Notes under the pieces: model-generated
What the model was told of the DNA's origin: nothing
The model's database searches: none
What the model saw: only the letters and a program-made list of their open reading frames with translations
In this document: piece after piece, positions 5,110 through 26,517 of the stretch
Numbering within the stretch: the first letter of the stretch is position 1
Layout of the letters: each line of letters starts with the position of its first letter
Made by a program: the position numbers and the translations under genes
Origin: Paragordius varius
Lineage: Eukaryota; Animalia; Nematomorpha
DNA: 64,000 bases
Assembly: GCA_964247055.1 (NCBI GenBank)
Contig: OZ176052.1
Coordinates: 5,518,001 to 5,582,000, forward strand
Direction of reading: 5' to 3'

Positions 5110-8100
5110 ATGTATCATAAGAAATATTCTAAATGGCCCCCTAAATTGTTTAAAAAATGGATCTCAATAACAATTATATGTGTTATTAAAATTTTACCCT
5201 TATATTCCTCAAATCAACAAATATACGTACTAAATACTAGCCCAGGTTTATATTTTTAATTTTTAACTTAATATTCAAATTCGATTAACATTTTACAGTA
5301 TGAGTAAGTAAATATACATTGCTAGAAAGTTATTAATTATTGCCACATAGTAAATAAAAGAGCAGTATTATTGGCTTATAATAATTTCTTTTTTTACTAT
5401 TACTACCTAATAATACTCACCTTTGTTGTTACTATATGGCAATAATTAATAACTTACTAGCAATGTATACTTATACTGTATCATATTTGAAAAAATTATT
5501 AACCTGCTAGAGCATCTTGATAAAAAACAATACAAATAACCTTGCAAAGTTGTTGACATTAAAAATATACATTTTGTACCCCTTGGGTTGATTTTAAATA
5601 CTCATTTGAGAAGTTTTGCCGCCAAATTTTTCAGTGTTTTTTAGTTATGATAAAATAGTATCATGGTCAAGATAAAAGTTCGATAAATATCCTTTAATTT
5701 TAATAATAATTTGTGCTTTTAATCTTTTTCCTTAAATATGAATTGATTATTTCTATATACATGAATAATCTCTATAAAAATTATTTTTTTCATAAATTCA
5801 CATCATACAAATTTGATAGATGTTAATGGGTCAACAAAATTTGAAACGGCTTGCGGTAAAAACATCAGTTCAGACGGATCTGTCCTGCTGTCTCACGATT
5901 TCGAACATCTCTATTATGCTAAAACAGGACTGGCATGTAAAGTTACAATAATGGCACCCGAAGGTTAATTATAACTTTATATTCAGCTGTTAGAGTGGAT
6001 GGGAAGTCTGATGCGTCCACTATTTGTGTGATTATGCCAGTGTTTAAATTTCGTGCGAAACTGAACACATTTTCTTTCACTGTTAGCCCTGGCTAGATAG
6101 CTATAATACAATTCAAAATCTTACCTTTGACAAAAACGCAAATCGACTCTATACTGTATATCTTTTATTTCGCCTTTAAATAATATAATGCTATATTTGA
6201 CGTAGATCAACAAATATTGCTTGTGTTTGACAAAAATTTTGACGTGGATGGTGGAAAAAAGGGGTGCAAAGATAAAATTGAGGCATATGATGGCAGTCTA
6301 ACTTCTAATTTTACGCCTTTAATCGGCTCATATTGTGGTAAAATTTTATTGGTTATTTAACATTAAATTTTGAAATGCTTGAGGATATAATTTTAATCGT
6401 ATATATTATAGTAAAATTATTTTTATTTTAGGTAAAAAGAGCCCGGGAAATATAGAATCATCGGGTAATATAATAACACTGGTATGGAATACAACAAATG
6501 GAATTGGTAATTTTATGGGGTTCACCATATACTTGGTTTTTTACCGACCTCACAAATGTTATACGCTCCCAAATAATTTTGAATGTTCCCAAAATTTAAG
6601 GTTAATCATAGTTTACGTACTCAAACTTAATTGTCATTTTAAACATCGATGATTAAAACATATTGAACAACCAATGAGTTATCTAGGCTTTTAGAAATTT
6701 TGGATTTTACACATTTAAATTACGCAAATTAGCTGTAATGTTTTTATTATTATTATTTTACAGAAATTAGAAAGATTAAGTGAATTTAATGATACCAAAT
6801 TATCACAATAATTTAATGTATATTCAATTTTCAGATTTCTTTTTTTTCGGATAAAATAACCAACTTGATTTAAAATAATTAAACCAAAAGGTCATTACTT
6901 ATTAAATTTAAAAATGAATAGTATAATAATTAATAATGTTTACTCAAAATTACTCTTTTACCATATCTTTAGATGTTTAAGTGACATACATCGTTGCGAC
7001 AATATTTTATCATGTGGGGTAAATGACACAAGTGACGAAGATAATTGTACCACAAAATCATCAATATTGACTAAAACATGGAGCTTAACGATACAGAAGG
7101 CAATGGCTCAAATTTTGTTGAATCCCTTCATTATAATTGAATGGACGCTATATGTTTTTATCTTTTTCGTTATAATGGTACTTTTGCTATGTTGCATGAT
7201 GTCACTGTGTGCTGCATTTTGCTGTTGTTTGGGTTTTCAGGTAAAAATTAGCTCTTTTGTATATCTGACTAACTAATTATTGGGATCATTTATTTATTTT
7301 TATCTCTATACAGTTTTATGGCCCAGATTATTCCTACAATGGTAATCGTTTGTCCATATGGGACAAAAGTGTTCCCCCGCCATGCGAATATGAAAGTAAA
7401 AATGAAAAGAGAGCCTCTATAGTTACAATTGCACCGCGTAAAATGAGTAATGCCTCATACAGGTATGAAGGCAACAGTAAGGATCCAAGACAGGGAAAAA
7501 GATTCTCCCTTTCTCAAATAGGCGGAGGTCCTATAAAATGTGCATGGACATATCAACAAGCCAACAAGATTCCTACACTGCTTAGCTCAAACCTCATGGC
7601 TGAAGTTGGTGAACACAATCAGAGCTTTCAACCAACGAGGAGAATTACAGATCCTACCAATAACACAGCAAATGCCAATGATGCAAACGATATGAGCCTG
7701 ATTGATAAACGTGGATCATTTTCAATTTGTTTGCGGAGGGACACAGCGCCCGCAATTTTACCGCCCGGCAATATAGTTCAGGTTTTATGAATGTGTGTAT
7801 TTTTCAGCGACGCAAACAATTATAAAGATGCCTTATTTTAACCCTATACCATAAAATGCATTATTAATGCAATGCAAATCCTTACATAATTTTGAGAATC
7901 CAAATAATTTTGTATATCCATAAATATTTATACTAATGCTTTGAAATATTATTATTAATCATATATGTAATAATACTGCGTCCAAAATCGGGGGTATAAA
8001 ATATAAACTGTTGAAATATAAATATTAGGAAAAAATATCAAGATTATCATAGTGCTTTGGTTTTGGCCCTTAGTTATGATTATTACACTTTTGTTGTAAG

Positions 8101-21191: not shown

Positions 21192-21390
21192 ATATAAATT
21201 TATAGAATGTTATAAGGAATAAACTCAAATATACAGCGTATTTATTTATTATATGTAGCCATTCACAAAATTAAATTACCAAACACATGGAAAAATTCAA
21301 TGTATGTACGTTGATAAATTTGTTTGAGCATTAGAGTAAAATTATAAAAATGACCAATATACCCTTTCAATTAACTGTATTTTAACAAAA

Positions 21391-23925
21391 TTAGGCAGAT
21401 AAATTTGTTGAAGTATGGTGAGTCAATTGTTTATGGTTTAGTTTTGTTTCCAAAATATGTAAGAGATCGGATTTGGTTAATTGAAAATTGGAACGTTTCC
21501 AATCATTTTTGAGCTCTTGTAGGATTAAGGCATACCTAGGCCCCTTAGGGATATCAAAAGATGCAAGATCTGTCCCCCTAATTGGAAAGTGGGGTATGGG
21601 AGTCTCCAAAAATTGCAGTAACAAATCAACTTTACCGGAGTATCTAAGGAATTGAATGATACAATCCCTACAAGTGTTTCGACATTTAGCATCTACCATA
21701 TGATCTATGAAATATTTACAGGACGATAATTGCACTTCCTCCTTATTAATAGCAAAATGTTCTCTCTGCTGAATTATGTATGATGCTATTTGTAATTCAT
21801 GATTGGATAGTTTTATCCGTTGATTAAGTATCTTGAGGTCAGATATGTCATTCAACAAAGCAGTTAAAATTGTAATGGGGTTAATTACTAAATTCGAATG
21901 AAGAGAATGATGTGTAATAGTGTCTTTTCTTGAATTAGAAATACCATTTTCTACAGCCGAGAATATTTGGTAACTTTCGTCTTCAATGTTAACAATTTTT
22001 TCTGTAGTTTCAACATTTTTACAAACACAATTGAGTTCTAGACTACGTTGGGTGGTTAAAATTGGAGGTAAACCCAAGTATGTAGCCACTCCGGTTTCAT
22101 AGATCTTATGGAGTAAGGATGCATTGTGATTCCCTAAACATATCTTTTTTAGTTCTGACCATAACCGTTCACCAGATATACCGCTTAAACCTTGAAAAAA
22201 CACAAATTATATTGAAAAATTATATTAATTTGAAAGTAAATAAAGCAAAAAAATTAATAAAGATGTAATCATTACAGTCATGTATGTTTAGAATTGTCAA
22301 ACATACGTTTTTAATTGATTTTACTTTGTTTTTTATTGTTATTATTTTCGATATGTCAACTTTCAACATGCGCATTTTTAAGCCTTAAAATAATAATAGC
22401 CTATTTATTGTAAACAATTAAAAACAAGATAAAATCAATTAAAAACGAATGTCTGACAATTCTAAACATAGATGACTGTAAGTATATTTCCTTCAAATTA
22501 ATTAGAAACAACCAAAAAAATATGAAAAATTTGTGGCAAGGTGTAAAATGATTTAAGGTATTATAAAAATTACCCGAAGCATTTTTGGCAATTATGTCTA
22601 ACGTTTGTGGTTCATGTAAATCCGGTGCGGAAACAATTTTACCGTAAAATCTGAAGTATCTAAGTATGCGAAGATAATCTTCTTTAATCCGTTTTTCTGC
22701 GTCCCCAACAAAAGCTATGCGATGTTTTTGGAGATCATCATATCCGCCACAAAAATCGTATAAATTACCTGCAAAATCTAAGTATTTTAAAAAGTGAAAA
22801 TGTTATTTGATGAAAATAATTTAAAAACTAAATCTAAAAAAAACGGAATTAATACATGCCGACCAAATCCAAAAAAGTAGCAGTCACTTTTAGATATTCT
22901 GCAAAAAATCTATGCAAGGAATTTTTTGACAAGGCAAGTGAAAATTTAAACCCTAATCTCAACTTATATACAATGTATTTTGGGAAGATTATAGTAAACT
23001 TCAATATTAAAGTGTTTAAGCCCAGTTACCACCAATTTACATACCATTTAAAACCTAATTCACCCTTGAATTTTTTTATTTACTTTAACATATAGAATTA
23101 ACACTCGAGCAATTCACCCTTAAAAAAATTATGCTTTTTTGAATATCAAAAATTACTTATAATATGGTTTGGTTAAAATTAATATATACAGTAAAAATAA
23201 TAAAATATGCCATATAAAATTTCTTATTATATTAGACAAAAAACAATTTATTTTTACTAGGGTGAATTTGAAGTCAAAATGGTATATATGCATAAAAAAG
23301 TACCCAAAAACATAGAATTGATTGTCAAATCTCGACGGTGTGCGTCTAAAGACCAATCCTCAGTGAATTCAACTTGAGCATGGCGTCCATCAGTTATTTT
23401 ATCAATTCTCAAAGTGGTAATTTCGTAATTTACTCTTTTATTTCAAAAAAAAAATTTAAATTTTTTAAAAAACGATATTAAATATTATACAAAAATTTAC
23501 TTATCGTTGATTCGTATGGTTATGGTTCCATGTTTTTCGCCATTTTTATTTAATATGCGAATTTTTTCAGCGGTAAATATATTTTTCATAGCAGACGGCA
23601 AAGCATTGGTAGCAAAATCCAGGTCCTCGGGAACTTTCCCCATGATAATATCTCTAACAGGGCCGCCAGACAAACAAATTTGGTAACGATTTTTAGCAAA
23701 AATTTTACTTAGTAATTCAAGTTCAGGAGTAAATATTGCTTTAAAATTGGGGTATTTGGAAATGTTCATTTGGAAATTTGCACGTTTAAGATAGGATATG
23801 GTATTTGTGCTGTATCTTTGGTTTAAATTAATGCTTATATCATTATTCAACAGCGGTAAAATGTCTTTTATTATTGTTACTAGGGGTTTTTTGATTATCA
23901 AAAATGGTTTTAGGAATGTTTGCAT
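21391..23925 (-). CDS. TRNT1: CCA tRNA nucleotidyltransferase (class II), 4 exons, N-terminal mitochondrial presequence candidate
   Basis: Exons 23925-23501, 23434-23304, 22777-22574, 22190-21391. Motifs: SGGPVRD..DLDFAT (catalytic DxD), [64 protein letters not shown]. Confidence 0.96.
22275..22478. mobile_element. TA-flanked hairpin MITE in TRNT1 intron 3
   Basis: TA|CAGTCATGTATGTTTAGAATTGTCA...TGACAATTCTAAACATAGATGACTG|TA. Confidence 0.8.
23042..23284. mobile_element. Hairpin MITE with subterminal AATTCACCCT repeats (copy 1, TRNT1 intron 2)
   Basis: taccattt...aaatggta ends; aattcaccct / agggtgaatt repeats. Same family at 29119 and 39333. Confidence 0.65.
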
Positions 23926-24127
23926 TTAGATCCGTAGTATTTGTACTTTCAGTTTGGTGGCGTTGAAGCCGTTTTTCATCAATCGTTTTTCCAAATATAT
24001 TATCTAAATTTCTTTGCTTACGATAGCGACTTTCCAAAGTATACCCTATATAACCAACTACAATTGTAAAAGGTAATAGAATATATGGTGATTTTTGAGT
24101 TACAACTTTAATCAGAGTAGACCACAT
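23843..24127 (-). CDS. SMIM12: Small integral membrane protein 12 (UPF0767 family), 94 aa, single exon, overlapping TRNT1
   Basis: MW...SPYILLPFTIVVGYIGYTLE...KTIDEKRLQR...IPKTIFDN parallels recalled human MW...[20 protein letters not shown]...KSISERREDR...APKAVL. Confidence 0.85.
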   Translation of the reverse strand: MWSTLIKVVTQKSPYILLPFTIVVGYIGYTLESRYRKQRNLDNIFGKTIDEKRLQRHQTESTNTTDLNANIPKTIFDNQKTPSNNNKRHFTAVE

Positions 24128-24152
24128 TGAAAATCCATGAATTCATAAAGAC

Positions 24153-26517
24153 ATGCAACTAATGCTTTACCGAGCAGCTTTGCTAAGGCCTAATGTTCTT
24201 CGGACTGCTTTTATTAATAATAACAATAATAGTAAAAATCATTTAATCAGGAACCTGCATAGTATATTTTAATTAATAAGTTTTAGTTTCTAACATAAAA
24301 TATGCAAAAAGTTTAGGATCGTTTTACAATCCCGCATACAAAAGAACGCTTTCAATCATCCCTGGTGTTTTATTTGTCGGAGGTTTTTTTGGAATTGTGG
24401 TTTGCTATGTGGAATCGGTAAATTTATATGTATAGCCAAAGTTTTATTTTTGGTATAAAAATCCTCAATTTTTTGCCGAAGAGGAGGATGGAAATGGAGA
24501 GCGTATCAAACGGAAAATAACTAATTTTTTTAAACAAATGCCGCCCAATAACATAAATTTGTCCAGTTTAAATGTTGAAGCTAAGCAAGAAAATATTGTT
24601 GATATTAATAATAATAAAGGTGATTAATTTTATAAGAATATCATCGCACTCAATGTTTTGTTGAAATAAATAAAATTTATTATTTATTTTTTATTACATA
24701 GATTTTCCTTCGCATTCAGACTACATTTTGATAGGGGCAGGGTTAGCATCTTTTGCGGCAGCACGGTCTATTAGAATTAATAATCCAAACGCAAAAGTAT
24801 TAAAATTAAATTTAAAAGTACACTTTTCAAGATTTTTTAAGTTCGACACTTTTAATATTATATAAAAAATATATTATTATAATTGAAGCTTAATTATAAT
24901 AATAAACTTTTCATACATATACATTATAATTACTTTTAATATGTTAAAGGAATTTCATCCTTAATCCTTTAATTTTCAAATATTTTGAATCTCAAAACAA
25001 TCGTTCACCATGTTAATATTTCTGGGCTGAATTAACTTATAATTGTAATTAATTTTTTTTAGTTTATTCATAATTTCTGTTTATTTACTACAATTTAATG
25101 GAAATAAACGATTTTTGTTTTTGAGTTACTGGTAAAAAATGTATTTAAATAAAAATTTAACACTTCATTACCTTTTCTTTTGTCAAAGTTTACCTTTAGA
25201 CTAGTTGTATATCCCAGAGCTCAATTTCGCGAATAAAGTACAGTTTTGAAAGTTATTTTATTATTTATTAACATTGTTTTCATGCATTAGATAAAGCTTA
25301 TATTTTTTACAGTTGAGCCTAAAATTGAGATAGCTTCAAAACGATTGAAACGAACAGCTGATATTAAAATCAAATTATATTAAGTTGCTGGTAAAATGTA
25401 GCCTGAAAGCTTCATAAAGTTAATTATTTACACATCTTAACCATAATATACATTTGTTCTCCTGTTGCATTAGCGATTGCAAAAATTAATAATGGCGGCC
25501 AAAAAGTTGGGAATGGAATTTTTACATTGTTATATTTTTTAAATTATTTTGTAATATGCCCTTAAAAGGCTAAAGAAAGAATTTTTTTAAAATCGGCTTA
25601 ATATCCTACATCCTTTTTAAGATATGCAAATTTTAAATCAAAACTATCCCAAAAGGTAATGGACTGTTAATGAAAGAAGTCTTAAAGATTAAAAAAACGT
25701 TATTATTTAATAATTACACAAAAATATTTCCGAAATCACAGGTAATATAACTGCAAAAAGGATAAGCTAACGCTAAAACATATATTTAACATCAACAATT
25801 AATAATTAATTTTACCTAGTTACATAAGGATTAATTTATTTATAAAAGTATAAACGCGAATTTGAAATTTTTTAAGGGTGATGAAGTGTAAAGTGTATTC
25901 GTATCACTTCAATTTGCAAATTTTATCCATGCGTTTTTCAGTTTTTGATTAAAAATTTAGATACTCATGATAGGCGATGAAGAGGAGAGACCATACATAC
26001 GCCCACCCCTTTCCAAAGATCTTTGGTTTGAAATTGATGAAAATTTAAGTTTGGACCTAAAATATAAATCATGGTCCGGAAAATCTAAAAGGTTAGATAA
26101 TTATCAATTTCGGTAAGAGTTATTCTTTAAATTCAAAAAAAACATTTCTCAGAACAAATTTGTCGGAAATGTTTATTTGATTCAAACAGTTTAATTTAGT
26201 GTCATTAAATGAATTTTCTGGTTTAGATTGCTTCTGCAAAATCTATAAAAACCATTTGTTATTAGATGCATATTTTATTGTTTGTTTTTGTAAATTTCCA
26301 ATAGCATTTATCTCGAACCAGCAATGTTTTTCGATAAAATTGAAGATTATGATAAGTTGGAGCGTGGTGGAATATTTCTTGCTAATAACACAAAGGTAAC
26401 ATATATTAAATGTTTCTAATGCTGTTTAAAATGATAAAAGCCTTTATATAATAAGAATGAATGATTGATATATCGCTTTATTTTAAAAAATATATTTTCT
26501 ATGATTACCCTTTTAAT

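What the first reader, a model, noticed from the sequence alone, without database searches (positions are those of the whole stretch)
23843..24127. SMIM12 overlaps TRNT1 on the same strand: candidate bicistronic unit
The SMIM12 ORF (24127-23843) runs 83 nt past the first in-frame TRNT1 ATG (23925) in another frame. The conserved SMIM12 PKTIF motif and the start of TRNT1 (MQTFLKPF) use the same bases. There is no room for a polyA site and a new promoter between them. Only two ATGs (24127 and 23979) precede the TRNT1 ATG from the SMIM12 start, so leaky scanning is feasible. I know of no described SMIM12-CCA enzyme bicistron, but I could not search for one.
Basis: partly seen in the sequence, partly recalled or inferred. 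Interest (0 to 1): 0.8.

Follow-up and report, generated by a model that had tools for sequence, protein, structure and literature searches.

The report
SMIM12 overlapping the CCA-enzyme gene start
In a horsehair-worm genome a small mitochondrial membrane protein gene (SMIM12) ends 83 bases inside the longest open reading frame of the next gene (TRNT1), so both probably share one transcript, as in human MOCS2, but no RNA data could be had to prove it.

Summary
A complete 94-codon SMIM12 ORF (24127-23843, minus strand; Pfam UPF0767) ends 83 nt past the first ATG (23925) of the TRNT1 exon-1 frame. Its conserved C-terminal motif IPKTIF shares bases with that ATG. Both genes are single copy.

- Every sequencing run I could lay was DNA, so there is no transcript evidence.
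- No close relative was reachable. In seven other animals SMIM12 has other neighbours, and two foreign TRNT1 loci have no SMIM12 upstream.
- The scarcity of ATGs is not significant (P about 0.3).
- Given the SMIM12 protein, the open 52-codon TRNT1 extension has P of about 0.08. It looks only weakly like a mitochondrial presequence.
- If TRNT1 starts at the second ATG (23769), the two coding regions do not overlap. They then lie 73 nt apart, which is still too close for ordinary separate genes.

Best reading (0.45): one transcription unit from a promoter shared with divergent AIFM1, with TRNT1 read by leaky scanning or reinitiation. The closest known case is human MOCS2 (77-nt overlap, leaky scanning).

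The scan had already noted this same stretch twice, and several other stop-to-start gene pairs on other DNA of this genome.

The parts
23843..24127 (-). SMIM12 (UPF0767) coding sequence, one exon, 94 codons plus TAA
   Evidence: ORF. PF15990, E 2.6e-13, 50.4 bits against a cut-off of 27. Collinear with 14 animal homologues from M1 to the C-terminal motif. Single copy in the genome.
23843..23925 (-). 83-nt stretch read in two frames: SMIM12 C-terminus ([27 protein letters not shown]) and the putative TRNT1 N-terminus ([28 protein letters not shown])
   Evidence: The SMIM12 motif is conserved. Translation of the TRNT1 frame here is inferred only.
23501..23925 (-). TRNT1 exon 1 with two in-frame start candidates: ATG 23925 (long form, 52 extra residues, possible mitochondrial presequence) and ATG 23769 (short form). 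The donor GT is at 23500.
   Evidence: PolyA_pol head domain. Homology to other animal TRNT1 starts at 23751.
23926..23979 (-). 17-codon upstream ORF in the TRNT1 frame. Its TAA (23928-23926) abuts ATG 23925.
   Evidence: Function unknown. It could allow reinitiation at 23925, or it could be chance.
21391..23434 (-). Remaining TRNT1 exons (approximate): exon 2 23434-23304, exon 3 22777 to about 22570, exon 4 22190-21391. AATAAA hexamers at 21250 and 21246 follow the stop.
   Evidence: tblastn and tblastx against TRNT1 of other animals. Splice sites read. Hexamers.
24128..24152 (.). 25-bp spacer between the divergent start codons of SMIM12 (24127, minus) and AIFM1 (24153, plus): presumed shared bidirectional promoter zone
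   Evidence: The AIFM1 exon-1 reading (a presequence-like N-terminus, then a membrane segment) comes from direct translation.
23867..23872 (-). AATAAA hexamer 22 nt before the SMIM12 stop, the only one near the SMIM12 3' end. The next ones lie at 23554 and 23550 inside TRNT1 exon 1.
   Evidence: Such hexamers are common at 26% G+C, so this shows no function.

Best explanation
SMIM12 and TRNT1 form one transcription unit. It is driven from the short promoter zone shared with divergent AIFM1 and ends at the TRNT1 poly(A) site. SMIM12 is the 5' cistron. Ribosomes that pass the SMIM12 AUG (U at -3 and +4, probably on a very short leader) reach AUG 23925. They get there directly or after the 17-codon ORF that stops right before it, and they make a long TRNT1 with an N-terminal extension for mitochondrial import. 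Ribosomes that pass this AUG too, or that resume scanning after the SMIM12 stop, start at AUG 23769 and make the short cytosolic/nuclear form. Shown here: the two ORFs, their identities, the overlap, and single copy of both genes. Inferred: the single mRNA, use of AUG 23925, and the mode of initiation.
For: (1) Geometry. The coding regions overlap by 83 nt, or lie 73 nt apart if only AUG 23769 is used. A SMIM12-specific poly(A) site would then sit inside TRNT1 and would cut TRNT1 transcripts as well. (2) The surroundings are not compact: there are few ORFs within 20 kb and TRNT1 has long, repeat-filled introns. The tight packing is therefore specific to this pair. (3) TRNT1 is the only PolyA_pol-head gene in the genome. 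None of the predicted mitochondrial tRNA genes is followed by CCA. A mitochondrial form of this enzyme is therefore needed, and the short form has only 6 residues before the conserved core. (4) The first 20 residues of the extension have 4 basic and no acidic residues. (5) All start codons on the path have a pyrimidine at -3. (6) Other same-strand pairs with 3-29 nt between stop and start exist in this genome. I read two myself (L014 and L015); the others are scan notes only. (7) There is a precedent: human MOCS2, with a 77-nt overlap and leaky scanning (PMC9607355).
Against: There are no RNA data; all four laid runs cover the introns and so are DNA. ATG depletion is not significant. The open extension has P of about 0.08 and its presequence-like make-up P of about 0.07 against an AT-rich null. 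Two other animal TRNT1 loci also lack an in-frame presequence in that exon, so mitochondrial import may be achieved in another way. The layout was not found in any other animal sampled. In the CTU1 pair of this genome, 10 ATGs lie in the 268-codon upstream ORF. Leaky scanning therefore cannot be the general mechanism for this genome's tight pairs.
Confidence: 0.45

Rival explanations
1. Two overlapping transcripts. TRNT1 has its own start site inside or just after the SMIM12 coding region. SMIM12 is translated from a longer transcript, or from one that is polyadenylated early. TRNT1 protein comes only from the shorter mRNA.
For: Monocistronic mRNAs are the rule in animals. A TATA-like TATATAG sits at 24050-24044 inside SMIM12. 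An AATAAA lies 22 nt before the SMIM12 stop, and others lie at 23554 and 23550. ATG scarcity is not significant. SMIM12 looks monocistronic on transcript-like contigs of other animals (L002 and L019-L021).
Against: The TATA-like and AATAAA strings are expected by chance at 26% G+C, and the TATA-like one is fixed by the conserved GYIGY codons. A poly(A) site inside TRNT1 would also truncate TRNT1 mRNAs. The genome has room for separate genes but does not use it here.
Confidence: 0.3
2. Operon-like unit. A polycistronic precursor is cut into separate mRNAs, for example by trans-splicing at an acceptor after the SMIM12 stop (AG at 23834 or 23810). That would make AUG 23769 the first AUG of the TRNT1 mRNA.
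For: The mitochondrial DNA supports a horsehair worm, the sister phylum of nematodes (PMC6649704). The genome has many tight same-strand pairs and start codons 25 bp apart. Some pairs have long upstream ORFs that rule out scanning. In the CTU1 pair an acceptor-like AG also follows the upstream stop directly.
Against: There was no match to the nematode SL1 family RF00198 (only 50 of about 38,000 first-look candidates were scored). Candidate acceptors lack the T-rich tract of this genome's real acceptors. Gaps of 1-3 nt in other pairs leave no 3' UTR. No paper in the library links nematomorphs with spliced leaders.
Confidence: 0.12
3. The coding overlap is only apparent. TRNT1 is translated from AUG 23769 alone, and the 52-codon upstream frame is open by chance. 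This is compatible with any of the transcript models above.
For: Homology starts at 23751. Open-frame P is about 0.08. The presequence-like make-up is common in AT-rich random frames (P 0.07). Other animal TRNT1 first exons have equally short N-termini.
Against: TRNT1 is single copy, mitochondrial tRNAs need CCA added, and the short form has no room for a presequence.
Confidence: 0.4
4. A spliced fusion. The donor at 24021 (ATC|GTAAGC) is joined to the acceptor at 23880, a 142-nt intron. This would put SMIM12 residues 1-35 in frame with TRNT1.
For: The donor matches the consensus well and the frames fit (arithmetic).
Against: The acceptor has an A-rich, not a T-rich, upstream tract. The splice would remove the conserved SMIM12 C-terminus. 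The membrane topology reported for human SMIM12 (N-terminus in the matrix; preprint 10.64898/2026.04.03.716438) would put the enzyme on the wrong side of the membrane.
Confidence: 0.03

Closest known systems
Human MOCS2 (MOCS2A/MOCS2B) bicistronic mRNA
   Same: A small upstream protein and a larger downstream one on one strand. The upstream C-terminus and the downstream N-terminus share about 80 nt in different frames: 77 nt in MOCS2 and 83 nt here. The downstream ORF is reached by leaky scanning (PMC9607355).
   Different: The MOCS2 products are two subunits of one enzyme, and its single mRNA is shown by experiment. Here the products are not known partners, no mRNA is shown, and the downstream ORF has a second start beyond the upstream stop.
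Human RPP14/HsHTD2, GDF1/CERS1 and SNURF/SNRPN bicistronic mRNAs
   Same: Two unrelated conserved proteins from one animal mRNA. RPP14/HsHTD2 also pairs a tRNA-processing protein with a mitochondrial one (PMC4705651).
   Different: As far as I recall (not checked here), the ORFs of those pairs do not overlap. In RPP14/HsHTD2 the tRNA-processing gene is upstream, and that pair is said to be old; here the layout looks confined to one lineage.
Dual targeting of CCA-adding enzymes from alternative in-frame AUGs (yeast CCA1; own knowledge, not checked here)
   Same: One gene would give a long form with a mitochondrial presequence and a short cytosolic/nuclear form from two in-frame AUGs.
   Different: Here the stop codon of another gene lies between the two AUGs. 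Use of either AUG is untested.
Nematode operons resolved by spliced-leader trans-splicing
   Same: Tightly packed same-strand genes in the sister phylum of nematodes.
   Different: No SL1-like gene or sequence was found. The spacing, an overlap or 73 nt, does not fit the usual spacer of about 100 nt (own knowledge).

Membership tests
UPF0767 / SMIM12 | Match to Pfam PF15990 above its curated cut-off | tested here: met
   50.4 bits against a cut-off of 27, E 2.6e-13; 49.6 bits in the genome search.
UPF0767 / SMIM12 | N-terminal hydrophobic helix with the conserved P, P, G, G and E positions, plus the C-terminal PKTIF-type motif | tested here: met
   Alignment A1: invariant P14, P19, G25, G28, E32 and R56, and the motif IPKTIFDNQ.
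UPF0767 / SMIM12 | Location in the mitochondrial inner membrane | not testable with these tools
   Reported for human SMIM12 only (preprint 10.64898/2026.04.03.716438).
TRNT1 / class II CCA-adding nucleotidyltransferase | PolyA_pol head domain with the GGxVRD and DxD motifs | tested here: met
   PF01743: 47.9 bits for exon 1, 28.4 bits for exon 2 and 80.5 bits joined in the genome search. SGGPVRD, DLD and RRDLTINS can be read. Identity to animal TRNT1 is 56-63%.
TRNT1 / class II CCA-adding nucleotidyltransferase | C-terminal RNA-binding region | tested here: inconclusive
   PF12627 scores 19.2 bits, below its cut-off of 22. The last exon aligns at 27% identity with the TRNT1 of L009.
Overlapping bicistronic mRNA of MOCS2 type | Two conserved protein ORFs on one strand that overlap in different frames | tested here: inconclusive
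   The ORFs overlap and the SMIM12 side is conserved. The overlapped TRNT1 part has no homology support, and its open frame has P of about 0.08.
Overlapping bicistronic mRNA of MOCS2 type | One mature mRNA that spans both ORFs | not testable with these tools
   No RNA holder was listed.
Overlapping bicistronic mRNA of MOCS2 type | A path open to leaky scanning: weak upstream AUG and few intervening AUGs | tested here: inconclusive
   U at -3 of the SMIM12 AUG and one intervening AUG. The count is not below chance, and the start consensus of this species is unknown.
Overlapping bicistronic mRNA of MOCS2 type | Layout kept in related species | tested here: inconclusive
   Absent in seven distant SMIM12 loci and two TRNT1 loci. 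No close relative was reachable.
Nematode-type spliced-leader operon | Spliced-leader RNA gene in the genome | tested here: not met
   RF00198 gave no match (a weak test: 50 of 37,936 candidates scored). The SL1 22-mer had no match at up to 3 mismatches. A leader of another sequence is not excluded.
Nematode-type spliced-leader operon | Upstream poly(A) site, a spacer, then a trans-splice acceptor before the downstream AUG | tested here: inconclusive
   AATAAA at 23872 and AGs at 23834 and 23810 exist, but the acceptors are poor and this fits only the short TRNT1 form.

The most novel reading that the evidence does not exclude
The SMIM12 stop codon sits on purpose between the mitochondrial and the cytosolic start codons of TRNT1. 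Ribosomes that translate SMIM12 can then resume only at the cytosolic AUG, and ribosomes that skip the SMIM12 AUG make the mitochondrial form. The upstream cistron would thus set the ratio of the two enzyme forms. This would be one case of a wider, undescribed use of polycistronic mRNAs in horsehair worms.
Probability: 0.1. Interest if true: 0.75.

Novelty: new member of a known kind. Interest (0 to 1): 0.45.

Why it matters
If one mRNA makes both proteins, this is a natural animal bicistron with overlapping frames. Few such cases are known (MOCS2 is the standard one). It would link three mitochondrial functions at one promoter: AIFM1, SMIM12 and tRNA CCA addition. With the other stop-to-start pairs noted in this genome, it would also suggest that horsehair worms, the sister group of nematodes, express many genes from polycistronic units without a nematode-type spliced leader. 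That bears on how nematode operons arose. If the transcripts are separate, it is simply an unusually tight gene pair.

Tried and rejected
- RNA evidence. The look-up of sequencing runs listed no RNA holder. The runs X6-X10 are guessed to be RNA, carry the same species label and hold almost none of the words.
- Relatives. The word search with SMIM12 found nothing. The full search found 17 hits, at best 43% identical. TRNT1 exon 1 found only distant animals, and the last exon found nothing. An exact look-up of the window's SMIM12 found no record, and neither did P0009.
- Synteny. SMIM12 neighbours elsewhere are a copper chaperone for SOD, a hydantoinase-type gene, a COMM-domain gene, a carbonic anhydrase, or nothing.
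- ATG depletion as support for leaky scanning: rejected as not significant.
- Presequence scoring by charge and hydrophobic moment: weak.
- Micro-introns of 18-45 nt that might join the frames or remove the stop. The candidates lie in conserved coding sequence or have poor donors.
- SMIM12-TRNT1 fusion by a 142-nt intron: judged unlikely (see rivals).
- Nematode SL1 family and 22-mer: not found.
- My recollection that SMIM12 is in MitoCarta3.0 was wrong according to the MitoAtlas preprint.
Full report
**What is there**

On the minus strand a 94-codon ORF runs from ATG 24127 to TAA 23845-23843. It matches Pfam UPF0767 (SMIM12) at E 2.6e-13, 50.4 bits against a cut-off of 27. It is the only such match in the 110.6-Mb assembly.

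A search of 1.84 billion representative proteins gave 17 relatives, at best 43% identical. Aligned with 14 of them, the ORF is collinear from Met1 to a conserved C-terminal (I/V)PKTIFxRN motif, here IPKTIFDNQ. SMIM12 is therefore complete, has no intron, and truly extends to 23843.

TRNT1 follows on the same strand. I read it as four exons, with approximate coordinates:

| Exon | Coordinates |
|---|---|
| 1 | 23925-23501 |
| 2 | 23434-23304 |
| 3 | 22777 to about 22570 |
| 4 | 22190-21391 |

- The PolyA_pol head domain scores 80.5 bits, and this is the only match in the genome.
- The exon-1 frame opens at ATG 23925, right after an in-frame TAA (23928-23926).
- A second in-frame ATG lies at 23769.
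- Similarity to other animal TRNT1 proteins begins at PNFKAIF (23751), six residues after the second ATG.
- The SMIM12 stop therefore lies between the two TRNT1 start candidates. The two ORFs share 83 nt (23925-23843) in different frames.

**Surroundings**

- AIFM1 lies head to head with SMIM12. Its ATG is at 24153 on the plus strand, 25 bp from the SMIM12 ATG.
- The AIFM1 first exon is joined to the next one across a 25-nt intron (24262-24286), which restores the frame.
- The neighbourhood is not compact. ORFs are sparse over 20 kb, and the TRNT1 introns hold high-copy repeats.

**Taxon**

An earlier follow-up in this scan called the genome horsehair-worm-type. I tested this. The 15.7-kb mitochondrial contig holds perfect palindromes with arms of 208, 140, 138, 131 and 92 nt. 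This is the peculiarity reported for Nematomorpha mitochondrial genomes (PMC6649704). I did not check that the palindromes lie inside protein-coding genes. The label is supported.

**Is it more than chance?**

- The two genes and their adjacency are real.
- The claim of a coding overlap rests on ATG 23925.
  - By base composition alone, 52 open codons have P 0.012.
  - Given the SMIM12 protein, however, the other frame stays open over the 27 shared codons in 64% of synonymous resamplings.
  - Multiplied by 0.13 for the 24 codons beyond, this gives P of about 0.08.
- The first 20 residues of the extension have 4 Lys and no acidic residue. Random AT-rich frames show this in 7% of trials.
- ATG scarcity carries no weight. 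One ATG is seen against 3.5 expected before 23925, and codon permutation gives P 0.29.
- Three more ATGs (24138, 24146, 24154) lie just upstream of the SMIM12 ATG. The SMIM12 leader is therefore either very short or carries small upstream ORFs.

**For and against use of the long form**

- For:
  - TRNT1 is single copy.
  - None of the predicted mitochondrial tRNA genes is followed by CCA, so the enzyme must enter mitochondria.
  - The short form has no room for a presequence.
- Against:
  - In two other animal TRNT1 loci (L008, L009) the first coding exon also lacks an in-frame presequence. Import can therefore be arranged in other ways.
- I put use of ATG 23925 at about one half.

**Transcripts**

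- No run on record as RNA holds the stretch.
- The four best holders cover the introns and show no splice joints, so they are DNA.
- The variants listed in exon 1 (23590, 23599, 23620, 23644) all fall on third codon positions of the TRNT1 frame. This only confirms that frame within the conserved domain.

**Logic of the layout**

- Transcripts started at the SMIM12 promoter must enter TRNT1.
- A poly(A) site for SMIM12 alone would lie inside TRNT1 and would also cut TRNT1 transcripts.
- The only AATAAA near the SMIM12 end (23872) lies before the SMIM12 stop. The next ones are at 23554 and 23550, in exon 1.
- A precursor that covers both genes is therefore likely (my estimate about 0.7).
- Whether TRNT1 is translated from that RNA, from a shorter RNA with an internal start, or from a processed RNA remains open.

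**Comparison across species**

SMIM12 has other neighbours in every other animal locus I could fetch:

| Locus | What lies beside SMIM12 |
|---|---|
| L003, L004 | a copper chaperone for SOD |
| L007 | a hydantoinase-type gene |
| L012, L013 | a COMM-domain gene |
| L010 | no TRNT1 within 5 kb |
| L002, L019-L021 | SMIM12 alone on transcript-like contigs |
| L011 | a carbonic anhydrase ORF 180 nt downstream on a 1.4-kb contig |

L008 and L009 have no SMIM12 in the 248 and 647 nt upstream of TRNT1. No close relative of the window's species was reachable. The layout therefore looks specific to this lineage, and its age is unknown.

**The rest of this genome**

- The scan noted this same stretch twice more (s1-261353, s1-261503).
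- It also noted other tight pairs on other DNA: COX17/DPH3, NDUFAF8/UTP6, an orphan ORF with CTU1, STMP1/PET100, PTRHD1/TMX2, ANAPC16/RCL1 and ASNS/TRIP13. A second pair of divergent start codons 25 bp apart was noted too.
- I read two of these pairs myself.
  - In L014 a TAA is followed by TAA and then the UTP6 ATG.
  - In L015 a 268-codon ORF stops 29 nt before the CTU1 ATG, with 10 ATGs on the way.
- Leaky scanning therefore cannot explain all pairs. Some other mechanism must act in part of them: reinitiation, internal start sites, or processing of the precursor.
- A nematode-type spliced leader was not found. RF00198 gave no match, though the test was weak.
- The paper library holds nothing on spliced leaders or operons in nematomorphs.

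**Comparison with known systems**

- The nearest case is human MOCS2. There 77 nt encode the C-terminus of MOCS2A and the N-terminus of MOCS2B in two frames, and the second ORF is reached by leaky scanning (PMC9607355).
- RPP14/HsHTD2 pairs a tRNA-processing protein with a mitochondrial enzyme on one mRNA (PMC4705651).
- Human SMIM12 is reported as an inner-mitochondrial-membrane protein (preprint 10.64898/2026.04.03.716438). AIFM1, SMIM12 and the long TRNT1 form would then all serve mitochondria. That is suggestive of co-regulation but proves nothing.

**Verdict**

| Reading | My estimate |
|---|---|
| One transcription unit with translation of both ORFs | 0.45 |
| Separate overlapping transcripts | 0.30 |
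| Precursor processed into separate mRNAs | 0.12 |

- Independently of these three, there is a chance of about 0.4 that the coding overlap is only apparent.
- Novelty: a new member of a known kind.
- Interest is moderate. It would rise if RNA data showed a single mRNA or a genome-wide polycistronic habit.

I did not build, search or fold the joined four-exon protein.

Noticed in passing
window 24262-24286 (+): The first AIFM1 coding exon is joined to the next by a 25-nt intron (GTATAT...TTTTAG), which restores the frame. This fits the 20-33-nt introns that other readers noted in this genome.
   Followed up: partly
window 24128-24152: Only 25 bp separate the divergent start codons of AIFM1 and SMIM12. 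Either the 5' leaders are very short or the two transcripts overlap head to head. Upstream ATGs exist on both strands (24136 on plus; 24138, 24146 and 24154 on minus).
   Followed up: partly
L018 (G000:C44:1-10000): The mitochondrial contig has perfect palindromes with arms of up to 208 nt. It also has a run of roughly 72-nt repeats at about 6745-7451 that ARAGORN calls as tRNA-Val or tRNA-Asp-like.
   Followed up: partly
L011:174-1387: In another, unidentified animal, a 1.4-kb public contig carries SMIM12 and, 180 nt downstream on the same strand, a carbonic anhydrase ORF (PF00194, E 1.3e-65). SMIM12 may be a 5' cistron there too.
   Followed up: partly
L015:1091-2232: A 268-codon ORF without a family name stops 29 nt before the CTU1 start, with 10 ATGs in between. 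If this is one mRNA, leaky scanning cannot serve CTU1. An acceptor-like AG directly follows the stop.
   Followed up: partly
window 22270-22600, 23105-23438 and 25109-25600: Contig depth rises 100- to 1000-fold in these intron stretches of TRNT1 and AIFM1, with many loose ends and joints. These are high-copy repeats.
   Followed up: no
window 23841-23845 (-): The SMIM12 stop overlaps a further ATG (TAATG) that opens a 2-codon ORF (M-I-stop) with A at -3. On a shared mRNA it would catch scanning ribosomes 70 nt before ATG 23769.
   Followed up: no
P0004 (115 aa): One SMIM12 relative from another organism appears to carry two SMIM12-like helices in tandem in one ORF.
   Followed up: no
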